A DNA stretch of 64,000 nt from positions 248,001-312,000 of IMG/VR virus record IMGVR_UViG_3300022868_000009, one strand, 5' to 3'. The notes beneath the pieces were generated by a model. It saw only the letters and a list, made by a program, of their open reading frames with translations, was not told the origin of the DNA and searched no databases. Of the stretch, positions 12,765 through 54,394 are shown in pieces (positions within the stretch are counted from its first letter, which is position 1; each line of letters begins with the position of its first letter). Both the position numbers and the translations under genes were made by a program.

Positions 12765-13520
12765 TTATAAATGCGGATCAAAATTAAAAAAAGTTATCTG
12801 TTCTTCTATTATTCTAAAAAAGAATTTTACTTCATTATTTTCTTTGTCAACATTTGTATATGGTGTAACTTTTTCAATCCAAGATTTATCTTGTGCAAAA
12901 TGTATTAACGATTGGTTTAAAAGTGTTTCATCTTTGTGATCTTCTTTAAATAAATCTAAAGACATAGTTTTACTAATTCTTAATTCATCTAATATTTTAA
13001 CTTCAGATTTTACATTAGACCACCAATCCACAAAATCTTTTTTAACTTGATGTAATAAATTTAAATTCTTAAGATTAGAATCTTTTAATCTCAACTTAAT
13101 TGATTTAACACATTGGTGTCTTGGAAAATCATACCTTAAAAATCTATCATTAATTTTAAATTTCCCTATTTTATAGACTAGATTTTTTATACTATTATAG
13201 AATCCATATTCTAAAATTTTATTCTTTATACCTATAAAAAATGATAATTTATCGTCTTTAATACTTCTTAATGTCAAAAATGCAGTTTCTAAACTTTTCT
13301 TCATTTCTAATTCACCAAGTAATTCATTAATCTTCGTTATTCTATCAGTTGAAAAAAAATAGTAAAAACTACCAGTATTTAAATAGTTTTGGAAAGCAAA
13401 ATCATTACCATGTTTATTAACCAAATCAAAAAAAATTCTAAATCCTTCTTTACCAGCTAACAATGGTTCTATTTGTATTTGTTCATTTATAAATTGTATA
13501 TATGTATTAATAACTTTCAT
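12765..13520 (-). CDS. Hypothetical protein with CTS-like leader (MKVINTYIQFINE)
   Basis: N-terminal motif shared with about 16 ORFs in the window. Confidence 0.6.
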   Translation of the reverse strand: MKVINTYIQFINEQIQIEPLLAGKEGFRIFFDLVNKHGNDFAFQNYLNTGSFYYFFSTDRITKINELLGELEMKKSLETAFLTLRSIKDDKLSFFIGIKNKILEYGFYNSIKNLVYKIGKFKINDRFLRYDFPRHQCVKSIKLRLKDSNLKNLNLLHQVKKDFVDWWSNVKSEVKILDELRISKTMSLDLFKEDHKDETLLNQSLIHFAQDKSWIEKVTPYTNVDKENNEVKFFFRIIEEQITFFNFDPHL

Positions 13521-13852
13521 AATAATCCAAGTTTAATTGCTTCTATTTTTGTATTTAAATCATTAATATTTTTAATATCCTCAGATTTACAAAATACATA
13601 GTTCGATTCACCACCCAAATTCTCTTCAATGCCAGTGTATGTTATTAAATTGTAATCTAGTTGATAAATTATACCTTTTATATAATTTTTAAAAGATTTT
13701 GGTTGTTGATCTGAATAACCATGCCCATCTTGCCAATATATCTTATTATTGAAAAACATTTCTTGCAATCTATAAAATTCTGATTTATCACACGATATAA
13801 TTAAATATTTTTCATTCGTTGTTCTTTCATTATATGTTTTTAAATACTTCAT
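13517..13852 (-). CDS. Small protein carrying both the MKYLKTYNE leader and the C-terminal EAIKLGLL tag
   Basis: Both motifs visible; core resembles the 55.9-62.4 kb family (..LQEMFFNNKIYW..). Confidence 0.75.
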   Translation of the reverse strand: MKYLKTYNERTTNEKYLIISCDKSEFYRLQEMFFNNKIYWQDGHGYSDQQPKSFKNYIKGIIYQLDYNLITYTGIEENLGGESNYVFCKSEDIKNINDLNTKIEAIKLGLL

Positions 13853-14337
13853 TAATAACTTTCATATCCATAAACACTATTCAAATATTCCTCTTTACTT
13901 ACTTTTGTTTCTTTACCATTTTTGTAAATATAATACTCACTTGGTGCAGTTTTAATTTTATCTTCATTAACAAAATTATTATATCGCATAATATTATTCT
14001 CATTATTCATGCCTGTCTCACCAACTAATGAATTTGGACTGCTTTCATCACTTCTATTAAATTTCTGATCATAATCAGCATTTACAATAGATTTTTCATA
14101 GAATTGATCTACAATAGCCTTAGCAATATCATAATCACCTTTACCAATATTCTCATCGAATATTTTTTTGATTCTGTTCTGATTTTCAGCCATCATCATA
14201 TTAAGAAAATCGTTAGCTTCCTGGTCATTATACTCAGTACCAGCATCTCTCTTATTTTCTTTAATGATATCCTTGATAATTTCTTGGATAGTCTGAAATT
14301 TATTGTCAACTTCTTTTGGTGTGAATTCTGTATACAT
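13852..14337 (-). CDS. Hypothetical protein
   Basis: 161 aa ORF behind the TATATA motif at ~14367; internal MRYNNFVNE resembles the leader motif. Confidence 0.55.
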   Translation of the reverse strand: MYTEFTPKEVDNKFQTIQEIIKDIIKENKRDAGTEYNDQEANDFLNMMMAENQNRIKKIFDENIGKGDYDIAKAIVDQFYEKSIVNADYDQKFNRSDESSPNSLVGETGMNNENNIMRYNNFVNEDKIKTAPSEYYIYKNGKETKVSKEEYLNSVYGYESY

Positions 14338-14439
14338 ATCTTTTAAATTTTATTTTCATTCAACAGTATATATAAAAATTTAATTGTAAACTAAATATCC
14401 AATGATTAATATAATTTTAAATAAAAGAAAAACATACAA

Positions 14440-16071
14440 ATGATCACAATAAACGATCTTAACATACACTTCCCACTAAAACTTATACCAAGAAACCAAC
14501 AAATAGAATCACTACATTTTGTTAAAGAATCAATTAATACTGGTAATAAATTTGTACTTCTTAATATACCAACAGGTGTGGGTAAATCATATTTCGCAAT
14601 AATGTTTATGAACTGGTATAGAAACTTTGTTAATGAAGATGCAAAATTTGATATTTTAACAAACTCTAAAGTACTACAAAACCAATATATAAAAGATTAT
14701 GTTTTTATAGAAAATTTTAAAGGTAGAAGTAATTATAAATGTGAACCTTTTAACACAGACTGTGAACAAGGAAAAGAATTATGTTCAATTATGAAAAGAA
14801 AATGTTCAGATTGTCCATATGATATGGCAAAAGAAAAATGGAAAAACAGTAATATCTCACTTACAAACTTCCATTTATTTAACACAATTGCATTATATTT
14901 GCCATCTTTATTAAAAGAAAGATCTTCTAATGTTCTATTAATAGATGAAGCACACGATTTTGAAAATGTTTTTTGTGATTTCATTTCAACAAGATTAAAT
15001 GTTAGAGGTCTTAAAATGATGGGTTTTACATTATCAGAATTAGAAAAAATAGACAAACAAATACAAAAAGTAAAAAGGATTGACCAATATGTTAATTTAC
15101 TTGAACGAGTTATAATACCAGACTTAAATGAAAAAGATGTACTATTTTCAAAAGAGGTTATAGAAAAATCAATTACATCAAAAAGAAAAACAGAAATAAC
15201 TAAATATATATCTCAAATACAAACAAACAAATTAAAATATAAAAACTTTATCGAAGAATTCAAAAAAAATAAAAATAACTGGGTTCTAGATATTAATCTT
15301 AACAAAAAAGCCAAAATATATTCCGGAATTGAATTAATAACACAACCAGTATGGGGTAATGAATATTTAAAAGAATCTATATGGGATAAATATGACCATG
15401 TTATATTTATGTCTGGCACCATTCTAAATAAAGAAATGTTTAGCTATATAAATGGACTGGATAAAGAAGTTTCAACATATTATGAAATGAATAGTCCATT
15501 TTCTATTAAAAGAAGACCAATATATTATATAAAAGCTGGTAAAATGACTTATAATGAAAAAATAGAAACATTCAAAAATCAAAAAGAATGGATTAAAAAA
15601 ATTATAAAGAAAAACGCTAAAAGAAAAGGTATAATACATACAACTACATATGAATTCGCAGATATGTTAAAAACCCAAATTTATAACAAAAGATTAATTT
15701 TTCATGAAACAAAAAACCGTGAAGAAATGTTAAATAAACATATTGATAGCAAACAACCGACAATATTAGTAAGCCCAAGTATGAATAGTGGTGTTGATTT
15801 AAAAGATGATTTAAGCAGATTTCAAATTATAATGAAAATACCTTTCCCAAATATTAGTAGCAATAAGATTAAGCAAAGACAAAAAACAAATAAAGAATGG
15901 TATAACTGGAAAACATGTGTTGATTTTATTCAATCTTATGGTAGGTCATTGCGATCTGAAGAGGACTGGGCTGAAACGTATGTACTAGATTCTAGTTTAT
16001 CAACGTTACTTAAATATAATAGTAATTTAATTCCGAGATATATCACTGACGCTATTAAAGTTCTAAAATAA
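14440..16071 (+). CDS. DinG/XPD-family ATP-dependent helicase with Fe-S cysteines
   Basis: PTGVGKS, KGRSNYKC..C..C..CPY, DEAH, SGT, KIPFPN, QSYGRSLRSEEDWA. Confidence 0.88.
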   Translation: MITINDLNIHFPLKLIPRNQQIESLHFVKESINTGNKFVLLNIPTGVGKSYFAIMFMNWYRNFVNEDAKFDILTNSKVLQNQYIKDYVFIENFKGRSNYKCEPFNTDCEQGKELCSIMKRKCSDCPYDMAKEKWKNSNISLTNFHLFNTIALYLPSLLKERSSNVLLIDEAHDFENVFCDFISTRLNVRGLKMMGFTLSELEKIDKQIQKVKRIDQYVNLLERVIIPDLNEKDVLFSKEVIEKSITSKRKTEITKYISQIQTNKLKYKNFIEEFKKNKNNWVLDINLNKKAKIYSGIELITQPVWGNEYLKESIWDKYDHVIFMSGTILNKEMFSYINGLDKEVSTYYEMNSPFSIKRRPIYYIKAGKMTYNEKIETFKNQKEWIKKIIKKNAKRKGIIHTTTYEFADMLKTQIYNKRLIFHETKNREEMLNKHIDSKQPTILVSPSMNSGVDLKDDLSRFQIIMKIPFPNISSNKIKQRQKTNKEWYNWKTCVDFIQSYGRSLRSEEDWAETYVLDSSLSTLLKYNSNLIPRYITDAIKVLK

Positions 16072-16078
16072 ACAAGAA

Positions 16079-16102: not shown

Positions 16103-16105
16103 ATA

Positions 16106-16471
16106 TTATTTATTGTATGATCCTGTGTTTGTCCAATCTCTTTTAGTTACCAATCCTGTTTGTTTTTTAAATTCTGTTTCTTGTGTTATTGATAAATTTT
16201 TATAACCATTTACAAGATTTGTAACTTTATCTAAACCTTTTTGATATGTTTCATCCGTTTCATCTTCAAATTTTTTATACCATTTTTTAGTAATAGCTGA
16301 CCACATAGGTTCACTACCCACCTCCGGATGATTTTCCTTATAATCTTGTAAATATTTTGTGCATTCTTCATAATCACCACAATTATCTATGTAATCCAAC
16401 ACATCTTGTAAATCATTATCATCTTGTAAATCATTATCTTGTAAATTTTCAAATTTTTTTAAGTGTTTCAT
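16106..16471 (-). CDS. Hypothetical protein with CTS-like leader (MKHLKKFE); start probably 16471 rather than 16501
   Basis: Leader motif begins at the second Met; short LQD(D)ND tandem repeat. Confidence 0.55.
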   Translation of the reverse strand: MKHLKKFENLQDNDLQDDNDLQDVLDYIDNCGDYEECTKYLQDYKENHPEVGSEPMWSAITKKWYKKFEDETDETYQKGLDKVTNLVNGYKNLSITQETEFKKQTGLVTKRDWTNTGSYNK

Positions 16472-16505
16472 AATCGTTTTTTTTTTGTTGTCATTTGACA
16501 TATAT

Positions 16506-17126
16506 TTAAAATTTTTGGATAAACCAAAAATTATCTCTTCCCCAAGTGGTCTTTACAATTTTCCCTTTAGCTTGTAAATCAGTTAAAACATTATTAACAT
16601 CAGCTTCAGAAAAACCAACATGACCAGCAATAGTATAAGAACTCATCTTAACACCTTTATCTTTCATAACATGTAAAACATCATTACCTATTTCATTAAT
16701 ATCTTTAGAAATACCTTTAGTTTTTCCTAAAGTATTTAAACCTTTTGGTCCTTCACTTTGTAAATCATTAATAGTCTTAGAAATACCTAAAACTGGTTTT
16801 GCAATAGCTGGTCCTTTAGCTTTTGTATCATTCAATTGATCTAAACTATAACCTGGTTGATTACCTTCAAATTTTTGAATAAATTCAAATTTATCGTGTC
16901 CTAATATATTATTCTTAACGATATGACCACCGTCTTCTAGACCTTTTAGTATATTGTTAACTTGAGCTACAGTAACAGCACCACCCAAAGCGGTTTTAAT
17001 TGACATAGCAGTTGCAGGAACGCCTTTATCTTTCATTGCTGATATAACTTGATCTTTTAAATCACCTATTTCTTTTGCTACTTTATTAGCTTCTGTGATA
17101 AACTCTGTTAATGTTTTAATTTTCAT
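16506..17126 (-). CDS. Tandem winged-helix (Zalpha-like) protein with CTS-like leader
   Basis: Two repeats of V..MKDKGV.....I....G....VNN(I/V)L..L...G.IVK; leader MKIKTLTEFITE. Confidence 0.65.
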   Translation of the reverse strand: MKIKTLTEFITEANKVAKEIGDLKDQVISAMKDKGVPATAMSIKTALGGAVTVAQVNNILKGLEDGGHIVKNNILGHDKFEFIQKFEGNQPGYSLDQLNDTKAKGPAIAKPVLGISKTINDLQSEGPKGLNTLGKTKGISKDINEIGNDVLHVMKDKGVKMSSYTIAGHVGFSEADVNNVLTDLQAKGKIVKTTWGRDNFWFIQKF

Positions 17127-17171
17127 AATAACAATTATTATTTTTTCTTTTACTTATATATAAAAGTTAAA

Positions 17172-17231: not shown

Positions 17232-18005
17232 TCATAATTTTATATTTGGAAATAGGTTTTTAACATTATCATAATAAAGATTTCTAATATCATCTATAGA
17301 TATATTAAATTCTTCTAATAAATTAGTTGGAGAATGTTTAGTTTTACCTGTCAGAACATCTTCAAAAAAATTTAATTTTTCGTCTAATAAAGTTTTAAAA
17401 TCTGATTTTTGTCTTTTTGCCATTTTATTTATACCTCTTAAGTATGCTAAAATTTCATCTGGTGTGATGATTTTATTTAATAATCCATTTTTTTCTTTAA
17501 TCATTATGTTATATAAATGTTTATTATTATAAGTAATATTATATCTTTTAGATAATTTATCATTATAATCTGATTTAACCATGTCGATTATTTCATCTGT
17601 AAAGTATTTTTGGAAATGTGACATTTCATGATCAACTAATTCAGATATTTTATAAGATAATTCCTCATATATTTTTTTAATATTGAGTGGATTTAATTTA
17701 ATTTCTTCAATAGGAATACTAAATGTTATTACACTTACAAATATCATAAAATTTGTAGTTTTTGGTAAAATTTGACCACCAACTTTAACTGAATAATTAT
17801 CACTTTTTTTAAAATTGATATCAATATCAAAATAAAATCTAATATCATCAAATTTTTTTTCCTCTTTAATTTTTATACTCTTTGAATCATTAATATTTTC
17901 AACATTCTCAATTATATCAACACATTTATTAAAAAAATATTTTTGTAATGATTTTCTAATCTCTCTCTTTAAATTAAAATATTCGTAATATTTAATATAC
18001 TTCAT
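17232..18005 (-). CDS. Putative zincin-motif protein with CTS-like leader
   Basis: HEMSH plus a downstream E (PDEILAY); leader MKYIKYYEYF; flanked by 59-bp direct repeats. Confidence 0.55.
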   Translation of the reverse strand: MKYIKYYEYFNLKREIRKSLQKYFFNKCVDIIENVENINDSKSIKIKEEKKFDDIRFYFDIDINFKKSDNYSVKVGGQILPKTTNFMIFVSVITFSIPIEEIKLNPLNIKKIYEELSYKISELVDHEMSHFQKYFTDEIIDMVKSDYNDKLSKRYNITYNNKHLYNIMIKEKNGLLNKIITPDEILAYLRGINKMAKRQKSDFKTLLDEKLNFFEDVLTGKTKHSPTNLLEEFNISIDDIRNLYYDNVKNLFPNIKL

Positions 18006-18064
18006 AATTCATTTTTTTAATTCAATACTATATATAAAATTCGATTACCTAAAATTTTTAAACT
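18006..18064 (+). repeat. 59-bp direct repeat, copy 2
   Basis: Identical to 17172-17230. Confidence 0.9.
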
Positions 18065-21891: not shown

Positions 21892-22284
21892 TTATAATGT
21901 AGGTAAATTTGAAGTTGGTCCTGACATTAATCGACCAGATTGTTTTGCTGGCATATAAACCCATTTTGTATGTTTTTTATCAATACCAATCAATCCTCTA
22001 AATTTATCTACTTCTGCTTCTTTTACTAATTCATCAACATCTTTTTTAGTTAACTTTAATTTAGTTCTATGTGTTTGTAAAATCTTTTGTTTATGTTTAG
22101 TATTTTTATTTAGTTTATTAAATTTTTCTAATATATCACCTTCTACACCAAGTTTTGTCATCAATTCAGTCCAACCTTTTTTTACTTTTTCTAAATTTGC
22201 TTTATCTTCTTTTGACATAAATGAAAAACCTTCATCTATTTGATTCTCTTTTGAGAATGATTCATATGTCATTAAATGTTTCAT
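21892..22284 (-). CDS. Basic hypothetical protein with CTS-like leader (MKHLMTYESFSKE)
   Basis: Leader motif; TAATATATA at 22311-22319. Confidence 0.6.
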   Translation of the reverse strand: MKHLMTYESFSKENQIDEGFSFMSKEDKANLEKVKKGWTELMTKLGVEGDILEKFNKLNKNTKHKQKILQTHRTKLKLTKKDVDELVKEAEVDKFRGLIGIDKKHTKWVYMPAKQSGRLMSGPTSNLPTL

Positions 22285-22402
22285 AATTTTAATTTTATTT
22301 TTCTTTATTTTATATATTAAACAAAAAAATTCATTTTTTAATCCATTGAAATTTTTAATTTTTGAAAAAATTCCGTATATTTAATTAAACTAAAACACTA
22401 AA

Positions 22403-24406: not shown

Positions 24407-24691
24407 TTATCTTTTAACATCTCTAATAACTTTATCCATTCCTTTTTTCATATCTTCTATTAAAGATAATATAGTTTTATATTGTGGATCTTTTTTATGA
24501 TATTTATCTAATTCTTGATATAATCTTTGTAATTCTTCTTCAAAATCTGGTCGTTTATTTTGTTTGCCAGTTTTTATTCCTTTAGTATAAACAGTTCCTT
24601 CCTCATCTACAAACCTATTTCTCCAATTCCAACCTATAGGCCCAATTTTATTTTCATTAACATAATCATCAAAATTACAAATATGTTTCAT
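24407..24691 (-). CDS. Hypothetical protein with CTS-like leader (MKHICNFDDYVNE)
   Basis: Leader motif. Confidence 0.55.
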   Translation of the reverse strand: MKHICNFDDYVNENKIGPIGWNWRNRFVDEEGTVYTKGIKTGKQNKRPDFEEELQRLYQELDKYHKKDPQYKTILSLIEDMKKGMDKVIRDVKR

Positions 24692-25543: not shown

Positions 25544-26041
25544 ATGCAAATTACAATAACACCAAATGATATTATAGAAAGATGTCTATGGTATGAATAT
25601 AAAAAGTTTTGTCTTAAAGACAAATCAGAACAAGAAATAGAAGAATTAATAATTGAAAACAAACCTTTTGTTATTACAGAAAATAACGCATATGTAACTG
25701 GATTATTGAAAATAATATCAACTAATAACTTAACACATAGATTTAAACAATATATAAATGAATTACTAGATATAAGATCAATTATTTATGAAAATAACGT
25801 TTATATAAATAAAATAATTCTAATGAAAGAATCTATTTCATTTAAAAATAGATTTCCTATATCATATAATCCAGACTTATCATTTAAATTAGCTCTAGAA
25901 GAAATGAACAATTTTATCAATACTGTAGTAAAAGAATTTGATAAACTTGAAGTAATTGAAGTTAGTAGAAAAATTAAAGGACAAATTAAAAAATATAATT
26001 GTGTTAAATCTACACAAATAGCAAAATTAGTTAAACTTTAA
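25544..26041 (+). CDS. Hypothetical protein
   Basis: 165 aa ORF. Confidence 0.55.
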   Translation: MQITITPNDIIERCLWYEYKKFCLKDKSEQEIEELIIENKPFVITENNAYVTGLLKIISTNNLTHRFKQYINELLDIRSIIYENNVYINKIILMKESISFKNRFPISYNPDLSFKLALEEMNNFINTVVKEFDKLEVIEVSRKIKGQIKKYNCVKSTQIAKLVKL

Positions 26042-26499
26042 ATTGTTTTAGGGTAACCATTAATAACAAGATCATTTGATATTTTATCTGTTTGTCTAGT
26101 TCCTAAATCGGTTTGTAAAGCAGGAGAATTATTTGATCTGTACATAGCAACAATATCAGTGCTCTTGATAGTGGCTTCAGGAGCATTTCTAAATAAACTA
26201 CCTTCAATATTAAAATCAACAGTATAACTATTCTTTGAATTTACTTTAATAATTTTAACAGGAGTCATATCACCAGTTTGCCAATATCTTATCATTACAA
26301 CATCCCCAGTCGTGTAAACATTACCAACTTCATGATTATGTGAAATATCATCTTCTAATTTCTTAATCTTATTCTTAGTTTTAAGATAATCATCATCATT
26401 AAAATTCAACTTCTTTAAATACTTATTTAATTTTGCAATATCTTTTTGTTTACCTTTAAAAGATTCATTTAATTCGTTATACGTTAGAAGATGTTTCAT
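26038..26499 (-). CDS. Tudor/KOW-like domain protein with CTS-like leader ([12 protein letters not shown])
   Basis: GDVVMIRYW...VKIIKV...YTVDF SH3-like barrel pattern. Confidence 0.55.
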   Translation of the reverse strand: MKHLLTYNELNESFKGKQKDIAKLNKYLKKLNFNDDDYLKTKNKIKKLEDDISHNHEVGNVYTTGDVVMIRYWQTGDMTPVKIIKVNSKNSYTVDFNIEGSLFRNAPEATIKSTDIVAMYRSNNSPALQTDLGTRQTDKISNDLVINGYPKTI

Positions 26500-26834
26500 G
26501 TTTTTAATAATATTAAGTTCTTATCACAAATATCATATATTTTATTATATATAGAATTTGAATTTTGTAAATCAGTTTGCAATATATTTAATTCTTTTAC
26601 TAAATCATCCCAACATTGACACTTTTCCAATATTTCTAATTTTTTAGTTTTAAATAAATTGATCAATTCTTTAACAAAATTAGGTTCATCAATTGTAGAA
26701 TTAGTAAAATTATTCCAAGTTTGAGATATATCTACAACGATATTCCAATCTATATCAGATTCAAATTGAACATCACCATCAAATATTAATTTTCCGGTTT
26801 GTTGTTCTTTAATATATTGATTATATTTTTTCAT
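26496..26834 (-). CDS. Hypothetical protein with CTS-like leader ([10 protein letters not shown])
   Basis: Leader motif. Confidence 0.55.
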
Positions 26835-28797: not shown

Positions 28798-28924
28798 GAA
28801 AAAGAATAATATTTTTAACTATATATTAATTAAAAATACCAAAAAACCTTGTTTTACATCAATTCTACATTAATCCTACATAATTTTTACATTTTTTCAT
28901 GAAAATCTATTTATATATAAGATT

Positions 28925-42761: not shown

Positions 42762-42860
42762 TTAAATATACTATATTTTTTTATTATATATTAAATAAAC
42801 TCATTCATAATTCAAAAATTTATTTTTAAAACTTTTAAAAATAAGAACACTAAAATATAA

Positions 42861-44034: not shown

Positions 44035-44158
44035 ATTTAATATATATTAAAGAATATAAATCCATTATGAAAAATTTAATGACATGAAAATTGGTTTAAA
44101 AAGAAAGCACATCATCGAAGCACTTAAAATGAATTTATTATAATAATATATAAAATAT

Positions 44159-44764
44159 ATGAGAAACCTTAAAACATATGAAGATTATTTATATGAATAT
44201 TCTGAAATTAAAAAAGAAGAAACACTACACATATACACAGATGGTAGTTATTCTGACCAAGTTTCAAATTATAAAATAAGTTATAGTGCAGTTTTAATAA
44301 CAGAAAACGAAAACGAATATTATCTTTCAGGACATATGGTTAGAAAATATGTTGATCAATTATTTGGTTCTCAAACACCATTAAATAGTTTAACTGCTGA
44401 ATTAGTGGCTTTAAATCAACTACTTTATATTATGAATAGCTATAAAATATCTAATAAAAATCTTCTAATTTATACAGATTGTGAATCTGTTTACGAACAC
44501 TTCAATGAATCTTTGCCTGTAATAAAGAAAAAAAATATGTCTAAATTAGTCAATAATATAAAACATAATATTAACAATTTAAAAAATAAAAAAAATATCG
44601 TTGATATTAGATGGATTCCAGGACATAAACAAATATACGGTAATATGATAGCAAACTATCTAGCCAAAAAAGGTGAAGATATCAACACTTTTAAAATATA
44701 TTTTAATATGGCAGATAGACATTTTAAAAATATGAAAGACTACGATTGGTTCAAAAAACTTTAA
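44159..44764 (+). CDS. rnhA: Ribonuclease HI with CTS-like leader (MRNLKTYEDYLYE)
   Basis: IYTDGS, AEL.A, IYTDC, WIPGH...GN..A..LAK; the last catalytic Asp appears as N. Confidence 0.8.
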   Translation: MRNLKTYEDYLYEYSEIKKEETLHIYTDGSYSDQVSNYKISYSAVLITENENEYYLSGHMVRKYVDQLFGSQTPLNSLTAELVALNQLLYIMNSYKISNKNLLIYTDCESVYEHFNESLPVIKKKNMSKLVNNIKHNINNLKNKKNIVDIRWIPGHKQIYGNMIANYLAKKGEDINTFKIYFNMADRHFKNMKDYDWFKKL

Positions 44765-45399
44765 AAATCACCACCTTTTATTGGAGGAGCACCCCAGTGA
44801 CAAACTAAATATTGTGGCATATTTTCAAGTTTCTTAAATTTCAAACCTTTACTAGCTAAAGTTAAAACAAATAACCAATCATGACCATAACCAGTTTTCC
44901 ATTCTATACCAGAAATATTCTTATGACAAATAGAACTTGTTCCGATCTGACCAAATCTCGGTTCAACCAACCTTTTATGTAATATTTTAAAATCTTTACT
45001 ACCAACTAAATAATCATCATAATATACCCAGTCATATTTATTAATATCAAATTGAGACATTATAGTTTCTAAATGTGTTTTACCCCAAGCATCATCACTA
45101 TCAAGATAAGCGATAACTTCACCTTTAGCATGGTTTAATCCTTCTGTTCTAACATTTCCACTATAAGTTGGCTGTTTTGGTATTATTATACATTCAATAT
45201 TTGGAATATCATCCCAATTTTCTTTATATATCTCATAAGTTTTTGTACAACCATCTGAAACAATAATTAATTCAGTATTTTTATATGATTGTTTTATAAA
45301 AGTTTTAACAGCTCTTATAAATTTTTTATCTCTATTTTTAGCAGCATTTGGATAATCACCCAAATAACTTGCCATTATAACTGAAACTAATTTATTCAT
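44761..45399 (-). CDS. Glycosyltransferase family 2
   Basis: VSVIMASY, ELIIVSDGC, R..GL..AKGE.IAYLDSDD, GHDW. Confidence 0.9.
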   Translation of the reverse strand: MNKLVSVIMASYLGDYPNAAKNRDKKFIRAVKTFIKQSYKNTELIIVSDGCTKTYEIYKENWDDIPNIECIIIPKQPTYSGNVRTEGLNHAKGEVIAYLDSDDAWGKTHLETIMSQFDINKYDWVYYDDYLVGSKDFKILHKRLVEPRFGQIGTSSICHKNISGIEWKTGYGHDWLFVLTLASKGLKFKKLENMPQYLVCHWGAPPIKGGDF

Positions 45400-45414
45400 A
45401 TTATTTATTTTATT

Positions 45415-46587: not shown

Positions 46588-46610
46588 ATTATTCTTTATT
46601 TTTGGAAAGA

Positions 46611-47141
46611 TTAACGTTTCATTAATTCTCTATATTGTTCTTCTAATTGAGATATTTTATCTTTCATATATTCATTCTCACTAGTTAATTTTTCAACCTC
46701 ACATTTATATTCATTTAATTCAATTTGCAAATTCCCAGTCGTTGTACCTTCACAACACTTATCAAATATATCACCATCTTCTTCCATTAAAATAGTTGAA
46801 ATATATTTTCCAGATATTTCATTTTTTATATCATTTAATTTCGCATGTAATGCATTTTGATAATTAATATCAGAATCTAATTCTAATTCATCTTTAATCC
46901 ATCCAGATGATACTTCTAAACAATGATTTTCATGTTCTGTTATTAATTGTCGAACTTGTGGTTTAATTGCATTTGATATCAATAAAGTAAAATTACTTTT
47001 ATCTGCATATGATTTACATAATATCTCACTTATAGTGTCAGCAATAATATTTGATATTATTTCGTAAGCTTCTGTTGATACAACCATTTCGGTGTATGTT
47101 TGTTCTCTATTTTCATTAAATATGAAACCTTTTTTAATCAT
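46611..47141 (-). CDS. Hypothetical protein with C-terminal coiled coil
   Basis: 176 aa ORF in the GT/thyA operon. Confidence 0.55.
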   Translation of the reverse strand: MIKKGFIFNENREQTYTEMVVSTEAYEIISNIIADTISEILCKSYADKSNFTLLISNAIKPQVRQLITEHENHCLEVSSGWIKDELELDSDINYQNALHAKLNDIKNEISGKYISTILMEEDGDIFDKCCEGTTTGNLQIELNEYKCEVEKLTSENEYMKDKISQLEEQYRELMKR

Positions 47142-47152
47142 TTTTTAAATTA

Positions 47153-48370
47153 TTATTTTTTAGATACTATCTCTTTATAAAGATCAGTTCTTTTTTTATT
47201 TACTACACTCATTTCAAACGTTTTCATAAAATATTCATGATTTGCTTCACCATGATCAATAATAGCATTTGGGTTATCAACATACCATTTCATTTTATTA
47301 TACCAATCACTATTTTTTTCACTAACATAAAAACCTTTTTGTTTACCGTCATTTTTGCCTTCTATATCATCTATAAGATAAGGACCATAATCACTTAATA
47401 TTATTGGCATTTTGTGAGCACCAGATTCAATTACTTTTAATTGAGATTTACAATAATTAAACATATGATTATTTTTTAAAGGTGCTAAAGAAATATCAGC
47501 CTCTCTATACATTGTACCATATTCTAAAATGGCTTTTGTCCATCTTCTTTGATAAAATTCATCTTTGTATTTTTCAACATATCCAAAAGTAACATTATCA
47601 TTTTTTTCATTATTATCTAAATGAGATCTATAATTATGATCTTTTATATATTTATTACCACTTGTAAATATACTCTCAAAATGACCCCATTGACTTCTTC
47701 TAGAATCATCAATTGCAGTTTGGCCACCAGCCATTCTGATTCTTAAATCAAACCCACACAAATAAATTTGTGCCTTTGTCAAAAATTCTTTATCAAATAA
47801 TTTAAAATCATCCTTTAATAATCTTAAATCTGGCATATGAGAAATACCACCACCCCATATAAATCTAGTTTTTTCAGATTCAACTTTAACAGAGTTCCAT
47901 TGTTGCTCTTTAATATTTAAAGCATTTTCAATAACAGTAATATTTGGATTATGTTCTCTAATTATATCTGCAAACAAAGGAGAAGTAGTTGTTATATGAT
48001 CTGAATTTTTAAGAATTTTTTCAATAACTGATTGTGAATTATTCTTTTTCCATGATCTATAATTTAAATGAGTACTATTCAATATCCAATAATCATCAAT
48101 ATCATAAACTAATTTAATATTATATTTTTTAATAATTGAATAAAAAACAGATTCAATTTCAGGTTTTAAAGGTAACATTTTATTATAAAATAAAATATCA
48201 TATTTACTCATAAATTCCTCGCTTAATAACGGTAATGTACCATCAGAAAGAAGTCTAATGTCTACATTAATATCTGGGTCATTCATACATAAATGTGGAT
48301 TTAATATCCGATAATATCCAACACCATCGTTATCACCTGAAACTACAAGTATATTAATTTTTTTGCTCAT
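47153..48370 (-). CDS. GT-B fold glycosyltransferase (GT4-like)
   Basis: GVGYYRI..PH, YDIDDYW, WGGG.SH..DL, DISLAPL...FN.CKSQLKVIE. Confidence 0.85.
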   Translation of the reverse strand: MSKKINILVVSGDNDGVGYYRILNPHLCMNDPDINVDIRLLSDGTLPLLSEEFMSKYDILFYNKMLPLKPEIESVFYSIIKKYNIKLVYDIDDYWILNSTHLNYRSWKKNNSQSVIEKILKNSDHITTTSPLFADIIREHNPNITVIENALNIKEQQWNSVKVESEKTRFIWGGGISHMPDLRLLKDDFKLFDKEFLTKAQIYLCGFDLRIRMAGGQTAIDDSRRSQWGHFESIFTSGNKYIKDHNYRSHLDNNEKNDNVTFGYVEKYKDEFYQRRWTKAILEYGTMYREADISLAPLKNNHMFNYCKSQLKVIESGAHKMPIILSDYGPYLIDDIEGKNDGKQKGFYVSEKNSDWYNKMKWYVDNPNAIIDHGEANHEYFMKTFEMSVVNKKRTDLYKEIVSKK

Positions 48371-48678: not shown

Positions 48679-48912
48679 TTAATTTAATTTTTCTAATTCT
48701 TCATAAAATTTTTCCATTAACTTCTCTTTATACATTATCCAATCTTTATTTGTCTTATCAAAATAACTAAAAACAAGCAAAGGTGATATTAAATAAATTA
48801 TAGGTACTCTTAATAACCAAAAAGGGTATATACATATTTTACCAATTTTATTATAATTAGACCAATCCTCTTTTATATATTGATTATACACAAACTTATA
48901 GAATTTTCTCAT
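48679..48912 (-). CDS. Hypothetical membrane protein
   Basis: Hydrophobic central segment. Confidence 0.5.
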   Translation of the reverse strand: MRKFYKFVYNQYIKEDWSNYNKIGKICIYPFWLLRVPIIYLISPLLVFSYFDKTNKDWIMYKEKLMEKFYEELEKLN

Positions 48913-50464: not shown

Positions 50465-50466
50465 TT

Positions 50467-50661
50467 TTAGTTGTCTTCTGACTCCTTTAATTTCTGAACA
50501 TAAATCGCTTTCAATTTTTGTTCTCTTTTCTTAACTGATTTCTTTTTATAATCTTTCTTGTCCCTGATTGCTTTTAAAACACCAGTCTTAATATATTTTT
50601 GCTTATATTTTTTTAAAGCTCTATCAATTTTATCTTTACTATCTACTTTAATTATTAACAT
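50467..50661 (-). CDS. rpsU: Phage-encoded ribosomal protein bS21 (Bacteroidota type)
   Basis: MLII.V...IDRALKKYK.K..KTG.L..IR....Y.K.SV.KR....KA.Y. Confidence 0.92.
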   Translation of the reverse strand: MLIIKVDSKDKIDRALKKYKQKYIKTGVLKAIRDKKDYKKKSVKKREQKLKAIYVQKLKESEDN

Positions 50662-50768: not shown

Positions 50769-51842
50769 CTAAGAAACTACATACTTATATAACTTCTTGT
50801 GATAGTCAAGATCCTTATAATCACTAACCATCAAATAAACTATATAACAAAAATAAAATATTTTATCAATCATCAAACTTCTATCAACATCACCACCAAC
50901 AAACCTAAATTCAACATAATCATCATCAATAATTCTTCTTAAATTCATACCGAAAGTTTTAGAACCTAGATTATTAGATAATTCCTTTAATTCGATTTCC
51001 AAAAACTTCTCAACATCATCTACAAAATTATCACTACTAAACTCAGGAAACTCACCCTTCTTTATCTTATCTAAAAATGTCTGACAATATGCAGTAAATT
51101 GTCTATATTCAATATCTTTATAAATATAGGGTTTTTCACTAGTCTCAACCATCATAATTAAACCCTTTACAAAATTCCATCTATCTACATCTTTATTTAA
51201 ACCAATATTAATATGAATAGAAGTGTGATTATTCATATACCAATAATCCTGTTTATTAAAATCATCATAAAAATCATTAATCATTTCTAAACCTTTATCC
51301 AAACCAGTCACATATTTCTTAGGTGAAAATTCAACCCCCCTAGATAAAGTTTGATCAAACTCAAATTTTAAATCATCATAATATTTAGTATAAAAATTAG
51401 GCAAATATTCACCAATTTTATTTATAACATATCCAAGATTTTCAAATTCATCTTCTTCCTCTTCCTCATATTCAATTTCTAAATTATCAATAATATTAAT
51501 CATATTAGAAACTATATATTCCTCTGTCTTATTCTTACAACTATTCATAATATTATCCAAAGAATCAGATATATTTCCAAAATCAAACTGATTATAAACT
51601 ATCTGTTTTAAAAAATCTAAATCATAATCAATTTTATCAATGTCTAATCCAACACGTAATTTTTTAAATATTTCTAATAAATACTTATCCTCTACTTTAG
51701 AAACTTTAACATTCTCATCATCTGTTTCTAATTCAAATTCAAAAGCTAATGTAAAATGTTCTACCATACCAGAATCAAATAATAATTTCTTATCTTTTCT
51801 ATTAAATTCTAGTAATTGTTTATATGTTATAAGATATTTCAT
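50769..51842 (-). CDS. Putative amidoligase (COOH-NH2 ligase type 2) with CTS-like leader
   Basis: FEFELE, EFSP, TSIHINIG, VEFR; leader MKYLITYKQLLE. Confidence 0.75.
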   Translation of the reverse strand: MKYLITYKQLLEFNRKDKKLLFDSGMVEHFTLAFEFELETDDENVKVSKVEDKYLLEIFKKLRVGLDIDKIDYDLDFLKQIVYNQFDFGNISDSLDNIMNSCKNKTEEYIVSNMINIIDNLEIEYEEEEEDEFENLGYVINKIGEYLPNFYTKYYDDLKFEFDQTLSRGVEFSPKKYVTGLDKGLEMINDFYDDFNKQDYWYMNNHTSIHINIGLNKDVDRWNFVKGLIMMVETSEKPYIYKDIEYRQFTAYCQTFLDKIKKGEFPEFSSDNFVDDVEKFLEIELKELSNNLGSKTFGMNLRRIIDDDYVEFRFVGGDVDRSLMIDKIFYFCYIVYLMVSDYKDLDYHKKLYKYVVS

Positions 51843-51878
51843 TTCAACTTTATATATTAAAAATTAATATATACTAGT

Positions 51879-52271
51879 ATGAAAAATTTTTTAAATTTTA
51901 TAAATAATAATCACGAATATTCAAATAATGAAATGAATAAAATTATTAAATTCATTGGCAAATTATGTAAATATGAAAACAAAAAAGCAAACGCAATATT
52001 CAATTTTAACATATCAAAAAATATACTTAATGATACAGATTTTAATGCATCAGTAAGATCAAATAACATATATTCAAACGATATAAAACAAGTTACAAAA
52101 ATACTTGATAAAGTATGCGAAAAATTAAATATGTATCCAACAATAAATATTATGATTAATACATTTGGTAGATCAACAAATTATAATATTAACTGTACAT
52201 TTGAATTTACAGAAAAAAATAAATTAGACATTCTTGCAACTATAGAAGGAAATAAATTAGGACTATTATAA
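51879..52271 (+). CDS. Small dual-tag protein (leader-like N-terminus, ...EGNKLGLL)
   Basis: Terminal motifs. Confidence 0.7.
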   Translation: MKNFLNFINNNHEYSNNEMNKIIKFIGKLCKYENKKANAIFNFNISKNILNDTDFNASVRSNNIYSNDIKQVTKILDKVCEKLNMYPTINIMINTFGRSTNYNINCTFEFTEKNKLDILATIEGNKLGLL

Positions 52272-52616
52272 ATGAAACATCTTAAAAAATATAACGAAGA
52301 GAAAATAGAAAATAAATGGAAAAATACAATAGTAATTTATGAATCTTACTCGGATTCATGGGTATATGTAGATGGTTCATTGATATCAGAATGGTCTGTT
52401 ACCATATTTGATATATTATTAATATTATCAGAGGATAATGTTAATATATTGAAATATAAAATATCAATGTTAACAGATCATTTTCCTCAAAATATAATTG
52501 ATCATTTAAACGATCACCCAGAACAAGAATTTCCAATGTATGATTTAGATATATATGAACAAGAAATAATAAAAAGAAAAGCAGAAAAAGAAGGACAAAA
52601 AATGGGTCTGTTTTAA
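52272..52616 (+). CDS. Small dual-tag protein (MKHLKKYNEE ... EGQKMGLF)
   Basis: Terminal motifs. Confidence 0.75.
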   Translation: MKHLKKYNEEKIENKWKNTIVIYESYSDSWVYVDGSLISEWSVTIFDILLILSEDNVNILKYKISMLTDHFPQNIIDHLNDHPEQEFPMYDLDIYEQEIIKRKAEKEGQKMGLF

Positions 52617-52617
52617 A

Positions 52618-52941
52618 ATGAAACATATTTCAACATATAACGAATACTTACAAACACCCTTAAATTTATCAATACCAATATAGAAGATAATGATAAATTT
52701 ACAAATTACCTAGAACAATCAAACCTAATATCAAAAAATTCTTTATTTAGAACATATCATAAAGGATGTATATATCATACATTTTTAATATCAATTATAG
52801 ATAATCATTCTTAAAAATTAGTTGTTCAAACCCAGATAATGTATCTGGGTTTGAACAAAAAGGAGTAAATGAAATATTATTTGATCCAGATATAATTATA
52901 TAATTATAAGATTAGAAGCAAATAAAATGGGATTATTATGA
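52618..52941 (+). pseudogene. Disrupted dual-tag gene (MKHISTYNE ... RLEANKMGLL)
   Basis: Both terminal motifs intact, but internal stops and frameshifts; contains a perfect 17-bp inverted repeat. Confidence 0.7.
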
Positions 52942-53219
52942 AATATTTAAAGACATACAACGAATCAAAATATAAACCATCATATACTGCACGCCCAATG
53001 CCAGATAAATATCGGCTTAGATGTGAATATTTAATAGATAAATACGGTAAACTAAATACAAATAATAAAATTACACATTTATCAGAAGAATCAGAAATTT
53101 TACAAATAGATATAAATGATGATTATAGATTAGATATTTTTAAAACTACTGATAAATCGTTACTTAATATGAGAGAATTAGAAATGAAATTACAAGCAAA
53201 AGAATTAGGATTGTTATAG
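52938..53219 (+). CDS. Small dual-tag protein (MKYLKTYNE ... QAKELGLL)
   Basis: Terminal motifs. Confidence 0.75.
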   Translation: MKYLKTYNESKYKPSYTARPMPDKYRLRCEYLIDKYGKLNTNNKITHLSEESEILQIDINDDYRLDIFKTTDKSLLNMRELEMKLQAKELGLL

Positions 53220-53281
53220 ATTTAATGAAAAGGGGAATTTATATTATAATATATTTAATGTATCATAATTTAGCACCTTTT

Positions 53282-53667
53282 TTATAATAATCCCATTTGA
53301 TTTGCCTGTTTAACATTATCGAGTGATATACCAACATTTTTTTCTAACCAATTTTCAATTGTAATATAATTGTATTTTTTATAATCAGGATCTTGTAAAT
53401 TATTTTGTAAATATACCATACTACCCCCAATTAAAATCATAATCTTTAACATTAAATATTTCATAATTTTCTTGAGAAATAGATATCAGAAAATAACTAG
53501 GTCTACCACCAGAATAACGAAAAATATAATCATAATCTATATCAATATTATAAAAATCATCATATAATGAAAATAATACAAAATTAATACATAATATATG
53601 TATACATAATATTAAAACAGATGATATAAAATTATTAGAAAAAATATGTTGTTTTAAGGTATTTTAT
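53282..53667 (-). pseudogene. Decayed dual-tag gene; the residual ORF 53282-53464 ends QANQMGLL
   Basis: ATA-AAA-TAC-CTT-AAA-ACA (ATG>ATA, KYLKT) overlaps the upstream stop; frameshifts in between. Confidence 0.55.
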
Positions 53668-54050
53668 AACAATCCCATTTTTTTCGCAGTTAATATTTTT
53701 TCTATTTCAGAACCTAATAAAAATGCATTTAATTTTATGAGTATAGAATTATCTAAATCATCATATTGTACATTTCTTTCATATTCACTATCTGATAAAT
53801 TATAATAATAAATAATACCGGTTGTATTAATATTACTTTGATAAATGTCAAATTTTAAATCATCTAATTTTATTTTTATTAAATTAGTAGATGTAGATCT
53901 ACCATAAAGATCAGATATTCTATTATTACCATCATTATTTTTTTCACCGTATTTATCTAGTAAATATAAACACCTATTAAATACTTTATCAGGCATTAAA
54001 TAACAATGATTTCTATTAATTTTTTCTAAATATGATTTCAAATATCTCAT
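53664..54050 (-). CDS. Small dual-tag protein (MRYLKSYLE ... TAKKMGLL), paralogue of 52938-53219
   Basis: Shared MPDK...RC.YL.DKYG core. Confidence 0.75.
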   Translation of the reverse strand: MRYLKSYLEKINRNHCYLMPDKVFNRCLYLLDKYGEKNNDGNNRISDLYGRSTSTNLIKIKLDDLKFDIYQSNINTTGIIYYYNLSDSEYERNVQYDDLDNSILIKLNAFLLGSEIEKILTAKKMGLL

Positions 54051-54091
54051 TAATCTTATATATTAAATTTAAATAAGAATATATAAATAAT

Positions 54092-54394
54092 ATGAAATAC
54101 CTTAAAACATATAATGAAAATAAATCATTTAATGATAAAGTTAATATGATTAAAAAAATAGTAGACACCGTTGGTAAAACTGATGATAGAGGTAAAATTT
54201 TAAATTTAAACTATAAATCAAAAGGTTCTAAAACCTATCTTTTAAAAATTCAAGATACATGCTGGATAAGTATTGAGATGATAGGTACAAGATTTTTAAG
54301 AAATTTAGATTCTAGAGTAATTGAATCTATATATAAAGAATTAAAAGAAAAATACCCAGAGTTTTTTATGGGAGATAAATTAGGTATTTTATAA
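54092..54394 (+). CDS. Small dual-tag protein (MKYLKTYNE ... MGDKLGIL)
   Basis: Terminal motifs. Confidence 0.75.
   Translation: MKYLKTYNENKSFNDKVNMIKKIVDTVGKTDDRGKILNLNYKSKGSKTYLLKIQDTCWISIEMIGTRFLRNLDSRVIESIYKELKEKYPEFFMGDKLGIL

What the first reader, a model, noticed from the sequence alone, without database searches (positions are those of the whole stretch)
12765..54394. About 16 proteins start with a T4 capsid-targeting-sequence-like leader: a predicted packaged and injected cargo set
Seen: N-termini MKVINTYIQFINE, MKYLKTYNE (x3), [132 protein letters not shown], scattered over 42 kb on unrelated proteins. Established: T4 internal proteins carry a ~10-aa capsid targeting sequence (IPIII MKTYQEFIAE) that is removed by prohead protease gp21 after Glu. 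Most of these genes or their operons also have the AATATATA late-type motif upstream. Inference: a large repertoire of head-packaged proteins, including enzymes (RNase H, amidoligase, HExxH protein, wHTH, Tudor-like), delivered with the DNA.
Basis: partly seen in the sequence, partly recalled or inferred. Interest (0 to 1): 0.85.

Follow-up and report, generated by a model that had tools for sequence, protein, structure and literature searches.

The report
Capsid-targeting-like leaders on huge-phage proteins
A 348-kb uncultured phage with a T4-type head puts a short T4-like "capsid address tag" on dozens of late-expressed, otherwise different proteins, which most likely marks them for packing into the virus head, although nobody has yet shown that they are packed or injected.

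Summary
The strict motif M[KR][YHN][LI]x[TKS][YF] occurs 11 times in the six-frame translation, always at an ORF start (0.02 expected). Selection is mainly on the peptide. The window belongs to a 348-kb IMG/VR contig. Its near-identical 344-kb twin carries a T4-type head module: gp55-like late sigma, Portal_T4, a gp21-like protease fused to a scaffold-like extension, and a Gp23 capsid protein.

Evidence for a capsid-targeting role:
- The core K-T-Y-x-E matches T4's CTS (MKTYQEFIAE).
- The leader is an add-on: paralogs and orthologs exist with and without it, and AlphaFold2 leaves it outside the fold.
- 14 of 16 leader genes lie in units headed by the (A/T)ATATATA element that also precedes the protease and capsid genes. 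Leaderless paralogs use a different, host-type promoter (11 of 14).
- The protease extension holds 9 to 12 matches to a Y(S/A)EY(I/L/V)AE repeat, almost the T4 CTS.
- In a sister lineage the same leader heads the acidic protein in the gp67/gp68 slot.
- The leader is essentially absent from cellular genomes.

Packaging, cleavage and injection remain untested. The short MKYLKTYNE form lacks a canonical L/I-x-E site. Of the cargo calls, RNase H and winged helix are confirmed, amidoligase is tentative, and Tudor and the HExxH family are unconfirmed. Verdict: a new variant of the T4 CTS/internal-protein system.

The parts
12765..13520 (-). Leader gene, 251 aa, MKVINTYIQFINE|Q (full T4-CTS-like form [YF]xx[YF][ILV]xE)
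   Evidence: in the late unit headed by 14367-14373
13517..13852 (-). Leader gene, 111 aa, MKYLKTYNE..., ends ..AIKLGLL. Member of the tail family whose other members lack the leader
   Evidence: AF2 leaves residues 1-15 unstructured (low confidence)
16106..16471 (-). Leader gene, 121 aa from the second Met, MKHLKKFE (the ORF also has an upstream ATG at 16501)
16506..17126 (-). Leader gene, 206 aa, MKIKTLTEFITE|A; winged-helix cargo (a curated DUF7343 match in the C-terminal half, and an HTH-family match in the N-terminal half)
   Evidence: Pfam DUF7343 8e-9; PHROG HTH families; own late element at 17155-17161
17232..18005 (-). Leader gene, 257 aa, MKYIKYYEYF; contains an HEMSH (HExxH) motif but matches no family
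   Evidence: late element at 18029-18035
21892..22284 (-). Leader gene, 130 aa, MKHLMTYESFSKE
   Evidence: late element at 22311-22317
24407..24691 (-). Leader gene, 94 aa, MKHICNFDDYVNE|N (full CTS-like form); no promoter assigned
26038..26499 (-).
   Evidence: downstream of the 612-aa fibre gene in the late unit
26496..26834 (-). Leader gene, 112 aa, [10 protein letters not shown]|Q (full CTS-like form)
44159..44764 (+). Leader gene, 201 aa, MRNLKTYEDYLYE|YSE, followed by an RNase H domain from residue 22
   Evidence: Pfam RNase_H 1.9e-12, residues 22-172; ortholog P0002 keeps MKNIKSYTDYLFE|YSE; late element at 44146-44152, 6 nt before the ATG
48679..48912 (-).
50769..51842 (-). Leader gene, 357 aa, MKYLITYKQLLE|FNRKD; cargo with a tentative glutamine-synthetase-like (amidoligase) fold
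   Evidence: AF2 mean pLDDT 89, with only residues 1-11 below 50; top fold matches are glutamine synthetases but weak; 32 of 55 orthologs have the extension and 23 start MILE..; late element at 51851-51857
51879..52271 (+). Leader gene, 130 aa, MKNFLNFINNNHE, tail ..GNKLGLL
   Evidence: late element at 51867-51873
52272..52616 (+). Leader gene, 114 aa, MKHLKKYNEE, tail ..GQKMGLF
52618..52941 (+). Decayed leader-plus-tail gene: starts MKHISTYNEY, ends ..ANKMGLL in the same frame, with about 9 stops between
52938..53219 (+). Leader gene, 93 aa, MKYLKTYNE, tail ..AKELGLL
53664..54050 (-). Leader gene, 128 aa, MRYLKSYLE, tail ..AKKMGLL
   Evidence: late element at 54057-54063
54092..54394 (+). Leader gene, 100 aa, MKYLKTYNE, tail ..GDKLGIL
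   Evidence: late element at 54079-54085
14367..14373 (-). Late-type element TTTATATATAC heading the unit 13852-14337 > 13517-13852 > 12765-13520
28820..28826 (-). Late-type element TTAATATATAG before the 612-aa tail-fibre-like gene; this unit continues into leader genes 26496-26834 and 26038-26499
42785..42791 (-). The same late-type element before the 869-aa, 218-aa and 650-aa (baseplate wedge gp6-like) operon. It shows that the element is shared with structural genes
12669..12675 (-). The same late-type element before the 1116-aa and 1825-aa operon
54856..63285 (+). Contrast set: an array of about 25 small genes, 13 ending in K(L/M)GL(L/I) with no leader. They are driven by a different element, ..TTCC(G/T)TATCTTTGTAT, with sites at 54902, 55832, 58065, 58815, 60127, 61707, 62057, 62393, 62502 and 63303

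Best explanation
The leader is a capsid (prohead-core) targeting sequence of the T4 type. The proposed mechanism is as follows. Late in infection a gp55-type sigma factor transcribes the leader genes together with the head genes. The 9-14-residue N-terminal tag (M-K-[Y/H]-[L/I]-K-[T/K]-[Y/F]-x-E, often extended to ..[Y/F]-phi-x-E) then docks the protein onto the assembling scaffold core. It probably does this by mimicking the scaffold's own tandem repeat, Y(S/A)EY(I/L/V)AE. The gp21-family protease then removes the tag after a Glu, and the freed cargo stays in the head and can enter the next host with the DNA. Leaderless paralogs of the same small-protein family are made from an early, host-type promoter instead, so one effector family would be deployed by two routes. 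Shown here: the motif, its modularity, the T4-type head module, the promoter partition and the scaffold repeat. Inferred: docking, cleavage, packaging and injection.
For: (1) The motif is position-specific and over 400-fold above chance, and selection is mainly at the peptide level. (2) T4 ipII/ipIII start MKTYQEFIAE|A and ipI starts MKTFKEF..ITE|A. The first 10 residues are sufficient for packaging, and gp21 cuts after L/I-x-E (PMC9026906). The window core K-T-Y-x-E and forms such as MKIKTLTEFITE|A and MKVINTYIQFINE|Q match this. The pattern [YF]xx[YFL][ILVM]xE has 12 hits in the window, 5 of them within the first 15 residues. (3) The head module of the source genome, read from its 344-kb twin (L267), has Portal_T4 at 3.8e-67, Gp23 at 6.4e-27, an 811-aa protease matching T4 gp21 at 3e-5 and Peptidase_S77 at 1.3e-4, and a gp55-like protein whose lineage profile matches T4 gp55 (hhalign 91.9%, E 7e-7). 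(4) The ATATATA element precedes the protease, MCP, baseplate and fibre genes as well as the leader genes. In the window the leader genes fall 14 late, 0 early and 2 unassigned, while tail-only paralogs fall 1 late, 11 early and 2 unassigned. In the genome sample the element lies within 45 nt upstream of 12 of 35 leader genes against 2 of 41 tail-only genes. (5) The leader is an add-on. RNase H starts at residue 22 and DUF6934 at residue 36. Paralogs occur with and without it. In one cargo family 32 of 55 orthologs have it, with at least 4 gains or losses on the tree. In a high-confidence AF2 model only residues 1-11 have low confidence. (6) The protease's C-terminal extension carries 9 matches to the full Y-x-E-Y-(I/L/V)-x-E unit and 12 to its (Y/F/L)(I/L/V/M)AE core in the source twin. 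Six other members of the lineage have 6-10 and 10-14. T4 gp22 starts MLKEQLIAE|A. (7) In sister contigs (L007, L065, L023, L052) the canonical leader MKH(L/I)KTY(N/K)EF..(I/V)xE|DAV heads the acidic 114-136-aa protein between portal and protease, the slot of T4 gp67/gp68. L037 has 8 consecutive leader genes. (8) Leader genes flank the head module in the source genome. (9) The leader is virus-specific: 132 of 142 matches in viral contigs are ORF starts, against 20 of 64 in 596 Gb of cellular genomes, and at least half of those 20 lie on mis-binned phage contigs.
Against: There are no virion proteomics or N-terminal data, and the phage is uncultured. The most common form, MKYLKTYNE, offers Y-N-E rather than L/I-x-E. 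Only 33% of 204 leaders have [LIVM]-x-E ending at residues 10-16, against 16% background. In the 357-aa cargo family the Glu of ..LLE|FN is invariant even in orthologs that start MILEFN, so it may be structural rather than a cleavage site. In most LR756501-type head modules the protein between portal and protease lacks the leader, and strict leaders are rare near the MCP across the wider lineage (16 of 930 ORFs). The protease scores below Pfam's curated cutoff. The number of tagged proteins is large (35 of 209 sampled), and the capsid's capacity for them is unknown. There is a mild A-ending codon bias at Thr and Ser in the leader. Transcription-unit assignment is by sequence motif only.
Confidence: 0.6

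Rival explanations
1. The leader is a late-phase tag with a destination or role other than the head interior. Examples would be docking to another assembly or chaperone, or acting as an N-terminal stability signal or degron that times these proteins.
For: Late-promoter association and modularity fit any late-specific tag. The short form lacks a canonical gp21 site. Many tagged proteins also carry a second conserved peptide at the C-terminus, which suggests that docking motifs are used more generally here.
Against: It does not explain the sequence resemblance to the experimentally defined T4 CTS and to the scaffold repeat. It also does not explain the canonical leader on the protein in the gp67/gp68 slot, or the clustering of leader genes around the head module.
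Confidence: 0.2
2. The shared N-terminus (and C-terminus) is inherited family sequence, or a DNA-level recombination anchor that lets gene cassettes be swapped. It has no targeting function.
For: About seven of the window's leader proteins are paralogs that share the K(L/M)GLL tail. The decayed gene 52618-52941 keeps both ends in frame while its middle is full of stops. Synonymous divergence is somewhat below expectation (0.24 against 0.31).
Against: The leader also sits on unrelated folds (RNase H, wHTH, GS-like, DUF6934) and on different phage lineages. Codons differ (TTA, CTT and CTA for Leu), so DNA identity is too low to act as a recombination anchor. The strict link to the late promoter is not predicted by this explanation.
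Confidence: 0.1
3. The conserved start is an mRNA feature that boosts translation initiation of late, nearly leaderless transcripts, perhaps in concert with the phage-encoded ribosomal protein bS21.
For: Several leader genes have the late element only 5-8 nt before the ATG, which implies very short 5' UTRs. bS21 is encoded in the window. The leader is A-rich, with a mild A-ending codon bias.
Against: Genuine late structural genes (MCP, protease, baseplate, fibres) lack the leader. Leaders also occur on internal genes of operons (13517, 12765, 52272, 26038). Substitutions are conservative at the amino-acid level (Y/H/F, L/I, T/K/S, Y/F), with free synonymous change at Leu, Lys, Tyr and Asn.
Confidence: 0.05
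4. The motif is a chance product of AT-rich N-termini.
For: GC is about 25%, and K, Y, N, L and E are common.
Against: 0.02 hits are expected and 9-11 are observed, with none internal.
Confidence: 0.01

Closest known systems
[quoted passage not shown]
   Same: An extreme N-terminal tag of about 10-19 residues, shared by otherwise unrelated proteins. The sequences are similar (T4 M-K-T-Y-Q-E-F-I-A-E; here K-T-Y-x-E and ..[YF]-phi-x-E). The phage has a gp20/gp21/gp23-type head and a gp55-type late sigma factor. The tag is dispensable for the cargo fold.
   Different: T4 has three such proteins (plus Alt and the core proteins); this genome has dozens. The dominant form here has a three-residue insertion (M-K-Y-L-K-T-Y-N-E) and no L/I at P3. 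Cargo includes enzymes and an expanded small-protein family that also exists as early-expressed leaderless copies. Packaging and cleavage are untested here.
T4 prohead core and scaffold proteins gp22, gp67 and gp68, and prohead protease gp21
   Same: The protease is homologous to gp21. The extension is acidic and repeat-rich, with many phi-A-E sites, like the many L/I-x-E sites of gp22 (16 in T4 gp22). A sister lineage has an acidic leader protein in the gp67/gp68 position.
   Different: Protease and scaffold-like region are fused in one protein of about 800 aa. The scaffold region is a regular tandem repeat whose unit (YSEYIAE) resembles the CTS itself; T4 gp22 shows this only at its N-terminus (QLIAE|A).
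Ejection and inner-body proteins of giant phages phiKZ, 201phi2-1 and SPN3US (PMC5694885, PMC7411985, PMC10052503)
   Same: Large capsids that carry many different internal proteins, processed after Glu by a diverged gp21 homolog.
   Different: Those phages use longer propeptides and an S/A-x-E site, and they have no short shared N-terminal consensus. They belong to a different lineage (nucleus-forming, with a virion RNA polymerase).
[quoted passage not shown]
   Same: An N-terminal signal of 30 residues or fewer is sufficient to load a cargo into the head for delivery to the next host.
   Different: No consensus is shared among the P1 Dar proteins, and the head type is not T4-like.

Membership tests
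T4-type CTS / internal-protein system | A short N-terminal sequence shared by otherwise unrelated proteins | tested here: met
   11 strict and about 6 looser leaders in the window, on RNase H, wHTH, GS-like and unknown folds
T4-type CTS / internal-protein system | Sequence similarity to the experimentally defined CTS (MKTYQEFIAE / MKTFKEF) | tested here: met
   The K-T-Y-x-E core and the [YF]xx[YF]phi-x-E forms, compared with T4 sequences read from NC_000866. This is a similarity of short motifs, not statistical homology.
T4-type CTS / internal-protein system | The tag ends in the prohead-protease site L/I-x-E | tested here: inconclusive
   Present in FINE, FITE, YVNE, ELNE, YIKE, YLYE and QLLE. 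Absent from the MKYLKTYNE form (Y-N-E). 33% against 16% background across 204 leaders.
T4-type CTS / internal-protein system | The phage encodes a gp21-family prohead protease and a scaffold core | tested here: met
   L267 7428-9863 matches T4 gp21 by phmmer at 3e-5 and the LR756501 ortholog at 2.7e-255. The L007 ortholog hits phrog_207 at 3e-40. Peptidase_S77 scores 1.3e-4, below the curated cutoff. The repeat-rich acidic extension looks like a scaffold.
T4-type CTS / internal-protein system | Tagged proteins are made when heads are assembled (late) | tested here: met
   They share the promoter-like element with the MCP and protease genes and are excluded from early-type units. This is motif-based; no expression data are available.
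T4-type CTS / internal-protein system | The tag is separable from the cargo fold | tested here: met
   Domain boundaries, paralogs and orthologs with and without the tag, and AF2.
T4-type CTS / internal-protein system | Tagged proteins are physically inside the head, are processed, and the tag is sufficient for packaging | not testable with these tools
   Needs virion proteomics or N-terminomics and leader-reporter packaging assays.
T4-superfamily (gp20/gp23) myovirus head | Portal_T4 and Gp23 major capsid protein | tested here: met
   Pfam PF07230 at 3.8e-67 and PF07068 at 6.4e-27 on L267
T4-type late transcription | A gp55-like sigma factor and an AT-rich single-element late promoter | tested here: met
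   Profile A4 against T4 gp55: 91.9%, E 7e-7. The (A/T)ATATATA(A/G) element lies upstream of head, tail and leader genes. Homologs of gp33 and gp45 were not searched for.

The most novel reading that the evidence does not exclude
A huge phage of a probable Bacteroidota host deploys one expanded effector family by two routes. Leaderless copies are transcribed early from host-type promoters. Leader-tagged copies are made late, loaded into the head and injected into the next cell. Loading works because the tag mimics the scaffold's own tandem repeat (YSEYIAE), so the T4 CTS would be a borrowed piece of scaffold. The second conserved peptide, the C-terminal K(L/M)GLL tail, would be a separate docking motif for a common target.
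Probability: 0.3. Interest if true: 0.85.

Novelty: new variant of a known kind. Interest (0 to 1): 0.68.

Why it matters
If true, the T4 capsid-targeting mechanism, so far known from a handful of T-even internal proteins, would be an ancient and scalable protein-delivery system. In huge environmental phages it would address dozens of proteins, enzymes included, to the head. It would give a sequence rule for predicting injected proteins (candidate host-takeover and anti-defence factors) directly from metagenomes. The tag-like scaffold repeat also suggests how the tag works. Finally, it would offer a natural short tag for loading foreign proteins into large capsids.

Tried and rejected
- Chance or AT bias: rejected.
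- An mRNA-level signal: disfavoured by codon analysis and by the absence of the leader from true structural late genes.
- Near-identical known phage: none found.
- The core-slot leader protein has no match in cultured phages.
It succeeded with the LR756501 MCP.
- The AF2 model of the small tail-family protein had low confidence (pLDDT 61), so no fold search was made on it.
- The tail-family core domain has no Pfam match and only 74 representatives among 1.84 billion proteins.
- I considered the C-terminal tail as a second protease-removed propeptide (phi-phi-E|[AGS]xK[LM]GLL). Glu is present at that position in only 50% of tails (N or Q in 30%), and tail-only genes are early. I left this open and did not adopt it.
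- The MCP N-terminal cleavage site could not be placed reliably by alignment to T4 gp23. I note only a conserved phi-(N/Y)-E-(N/E) at about residues 45-48.

Full report
**What the window is.** GC is about 25% and there are no tRNAs. No near-identical phage record exists. The window maps to IMGVR_UViG_3300023257_000007 (348,222 bp) and to a near-identical twin, 3300022868_000009 (344,634 bp). Its fused topoisomerase II is 55.7% identical to that of the 735-kb uncultured phage LR756501. The window also encodes helicases, a gp6-like baseplate wedge protein, fibre-like proteins and ribosomal protein bS21. It is part of a huge phage.

**The observation.**
- The strict pattern M[KR][YHN][LI]x[TKS][YF] gives 11 six-frame hits, every one at an ORF start and none internal.
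- N-terminal composition predicts 0.02 hits in 82 proteins, and shuffles agree. Only 2 of 2,501 other ATG triplets match, and both are plausible true starts.
- Leu codons in the leader are TTA, CTT and CTA. 24% of identical-residue pairs use different codons against 31% expected, so selection is mainly on the peptide.
- Beyond the leader most proteins are unrelated. About seven belong to a small-protein family that shares a C-terminal tail.

**Distribution.** Back-translated leader patterns found 142 matches in IMG/VR, and 132 of them are the first ATG of an ORF. They lie on many AT-rich contigs, several of 250-480 kb. In 596 Gb of bacterial and archaeal genomes there are 64 matches, and only 20 are at ORF starts. 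At least half of those 20 lie on GC 21-24% contigs of the same phage group that were binned into MAGs. The leader is therefore virus-specific. The consensus from 204 non-redundant examples is M-K-[Y/H]-[L/I]-K-[T/K]-[Y/F]-[E/N]-E. A second, weaker enrichment of [LIVM]-x-E ends at residues 11-15.

**Comparison with T4.** Read from NC_000866, T4 ipII and ipIII start MKTYQEFIAE|A and ipI starts MKTFKEF..ITE|A. According to the review PMC9026906, the first 10 residues of IPIII suffice for packaging, gp21 cuts after L/I-x-E, and phiKZ-type proteases cut after S/A-x-E. The window's K-T-Y-x-E core and forms such as MKIKTLTEFITE|A, MKVINTYIQFINE|Q and MRNLKTYEDYLYE|Y match this pattern.

**The head module of the source genome.** The module was retrieved through the LR756501 capsid protein. 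L267 is the first 15.3 kb of the twin contig. It carries:
- a gp55-like protein, whose lineage profile matches T4 gp55 at 91.9% probability, E 7e-7;
- a Portal_T4 portal (3.8e-67);
- an 811-aa protease (T4 gp21 3e-5; Peptidase_S77 1.3e-4, below the curated cutoff);
- a Gp23 capsid protein (6.4e-27).

The protease and capsid genes are preceded by the same (A/T)ATATATA(A/G) element that precedes the baseplate, fibre and leader genes in the window. Leader genes flank the module on both sides.

**Two promoter classes.** The leaderless array at 54.9-63.3 kb uses a different conserved element..AGTTTAGAAGGTATTCC(G/T)TATCTTTGTAT. It contains TAnnTTTG, which from my own knowledge is the Bacteroidota housekeeping -7 motif.

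| Gene class | Late-type units | Early-type units | Unassigned |
|---|---|---|---|
| Leader genes (16) | 14 | 0 | 2 |
| Tail-only paralogs (14) | 1 | 11 | 2 |

True structural late genes lack the leader, so the leader is not a general requirement for late-gene translation.

**Modularity.**
- RNase H begins at residue 22 and DUF6934 at residue 36.
- The leader-bearing protein 13517-13852 aligns with leaderless array members from its residue 15 onward.
- The 357-aa cargo has 65 homologs. All share the block (I/L)(L/F)EFN. In the 55 aligned full-length homologs, 23 start there (MILEFN..) and 32 carry an aromatic extension of about 5-30 residues (mostly 5-10) before it. The tree needs at least four gains or losses.
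- The AF2 model of that cargo is confident (pLDDT 89) except for residues 1-11.
- Its best fold matches are glutamine synthetases, but weakly.

**The scaffold repeat.** The protease's C-terminal extension contains tandem repeats of ..N(I/V)DK(N/S)I.Y(S/A)EY(I/L/V)AE.., confirmed by Tandem Repeats Finder at periods of 42 and 84 nt. In the source twin the full unit Y-x-E-Y-(I/L/V)-x-E matches 9 times and its (Y/F/L)(I/L/V/M)AE core 12 times. Six other lineage members, including LR756501, have 6-10 and 10-14 matches. The unit Y-S-E-Y-I-A-E is nearly the T4 CTS Y-Q-E-F-I-A-E, and T4 gp22 itself begins MLKEQLIAE|A. This points to T4-like protease specificity (phi-A-E|). It also suggests that the tag works by mimicking the scaffold.

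**A sister lineage.** In L007, L065, L023 and L052 the gene order is gp55, gp4, gp2, portal, leader protein, protease, MCP. The leader protein (MKH(L/I)KTY(N/K)EF..(I/V)xE|DAV, 114-136 aa, acidic tail) occupies the gp67/gp68 slot. These portals are closest to those of huge phages (LR756500, 57%). L037 has eight consecutive leader genes.

**Caveats.**
- The short form lacks L/I at P3.
- Most LR756501-type head modules have no leader protein in the core slot, and strict leaders are rare near the MCP across the wider lineage.
- The Glu of the 357-aa cargo's leader is invariant in leaderless orthologs too.
- Timing is inferred from sequence motifs only.
- Nothing shows physical packaging, cleavage or injection.

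**Verdict.** The best reading (confidence about 0.6) is a T4-type capsid-targeting tag that has greatly expanded in a huge-phage lineage. That makes it a new variant of a known kind.

Noticed in passing
window 13517-13852, 51879-54394 and 54856-63285; also L001, L008, L012, L021 and L267: A very large family of small proteins ends in a conserved C-terminal peptide, D-[LI]-x-x-phi-[LI]-[E/N/Q]-[A/G/S]-x-K-[L/M]-G-L-[L/I]. It accounts for 64 of 209 proteins sampled from this genome, and 23 of those also carry the leader (odds ratio 6.2). The family has only 74 representatives among 1.84 billion proteins and no Pfam match. The function of the tail is unknown. It could be a docking peptide (it loosely resembles clamp-binding QLxLF motifs, from my own memory), but that was not tested.
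   Followed up: partly
window 22372, 54902, 55832, 58065, 58815, 60127, 61707, 62057, 62393, 62502, 63303 (+ strand): A conserved, probably early promoter element, AGTTTAGAAGGTATTCC(G/T)TATCTTTGTAT, containing TAnnTTTG. It suggests a Bacteroidota host and host-sigma-dependent early transcription. In several cases it is followed by AGGAGG-type ribosome-binding sites.
   Followed up: partly
L267 8333-8780 (protease gene 7428-9863); also L169, L083, L160, L163, L158 and L167: The prohead protease is fused to a long acidic extension with 10-14 (Y/F/L)(I/L/V/M)AE repeat cores in a 14-16-residue repeat unit (..Y(S/A)EY(I/L/V)AE..). This looks like a repeat-built scaffold with regularly spaced protease sites.
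   Followed up: yes
window 50467-50661 (-): A phage-encoded ribosomal protein bS21 (Pfam 2.1e-9). Its neighbours differ from the published bS21-phage clades, where bS21 sits among TerL, portal, protease and MCP (PMC9723584).
   Followed up: partly
window 52618-52941 (+): A decayed gene keeps a leader (MKHISTYNEY) and a tail (..ANKMGLL) in the same frame, with about nine stops between. It is either a dying paralog or an emptied cassette.
   Followed up: partly
L267 5578-7320 (-) and 11890-13542 (+); L003 1788-3440; L083 8106-9689: Large DUF7487 or homing-endonuclease-like genes are inserted between portal and protease and just after the MCP gene.
   Followed up: no
window 44761-48370 (-): A long thymidylate-synthase-family protein (390 aa, against a 266-position model) lies among glycosyltransferase genes (GT2 at 44761-45399; GT1/GT4-like at 47153-48370). 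This is reminiscent of T4's hydroxymethylase plus glucosyltransferases and may indicate DNA hypermodification.
   Followed up: no
L001 3384-4102, L021 274-993, L008 4106-4585, L010 (minus strand; 179-aa leader ORF 'MKYLKTYNENQLIKDNL…', 0-based reverse-complement coordinates 5543-6082): These leader proteins have leucine-rich-repeat-like cores (..LDLSDLNLTELPELPEGLERLDCDNN..) and a variant tail..NANKMGLY.
   Followed up: no
L009, L011, L015, L029, L034 and L363 (GC 20-23% contigs): A sub-family has an extended conserved leader, MKYLKTYNES(I/L)(K/R)(H/D)(L/K)(L/M)KPKS.EEI. Some of these contigs are binned into MAGs named Saccharofermentanales, Trichloromonas or Cellvibrionaceae and have the same lengths as IMG/VR viral contigs, so mis-binning is likely.
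   Followed up: partly
L036 2906-3478 and 30066-31557; L169 34156-34788 (LR756501): Several small proteins of the 735-kb phage contain or end with another recurrent motif, DPYGEE.W. The same genome also uses looser CTS-like N-termini (MIKMFEQFKESLE, MVKNYLQFINE).
   Followed up: no
window 3803-12645 (-): Two very large late-unit ORFs (1116 aa, which hits only phrog_29329 of unknown function, and 1825 aa, with no family at all). They are probably virion proteins.
   Followed up: no
L267 3925-5532 (+): The portal ORF's first ATG lies inside the conserved N-terminal region. Upstream in-frame codons still encode the conserved ..GFFNRLLRNLSTFG, so the true start is a non-ATG codon or the 5' end is interrupted.
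   Followed up: no
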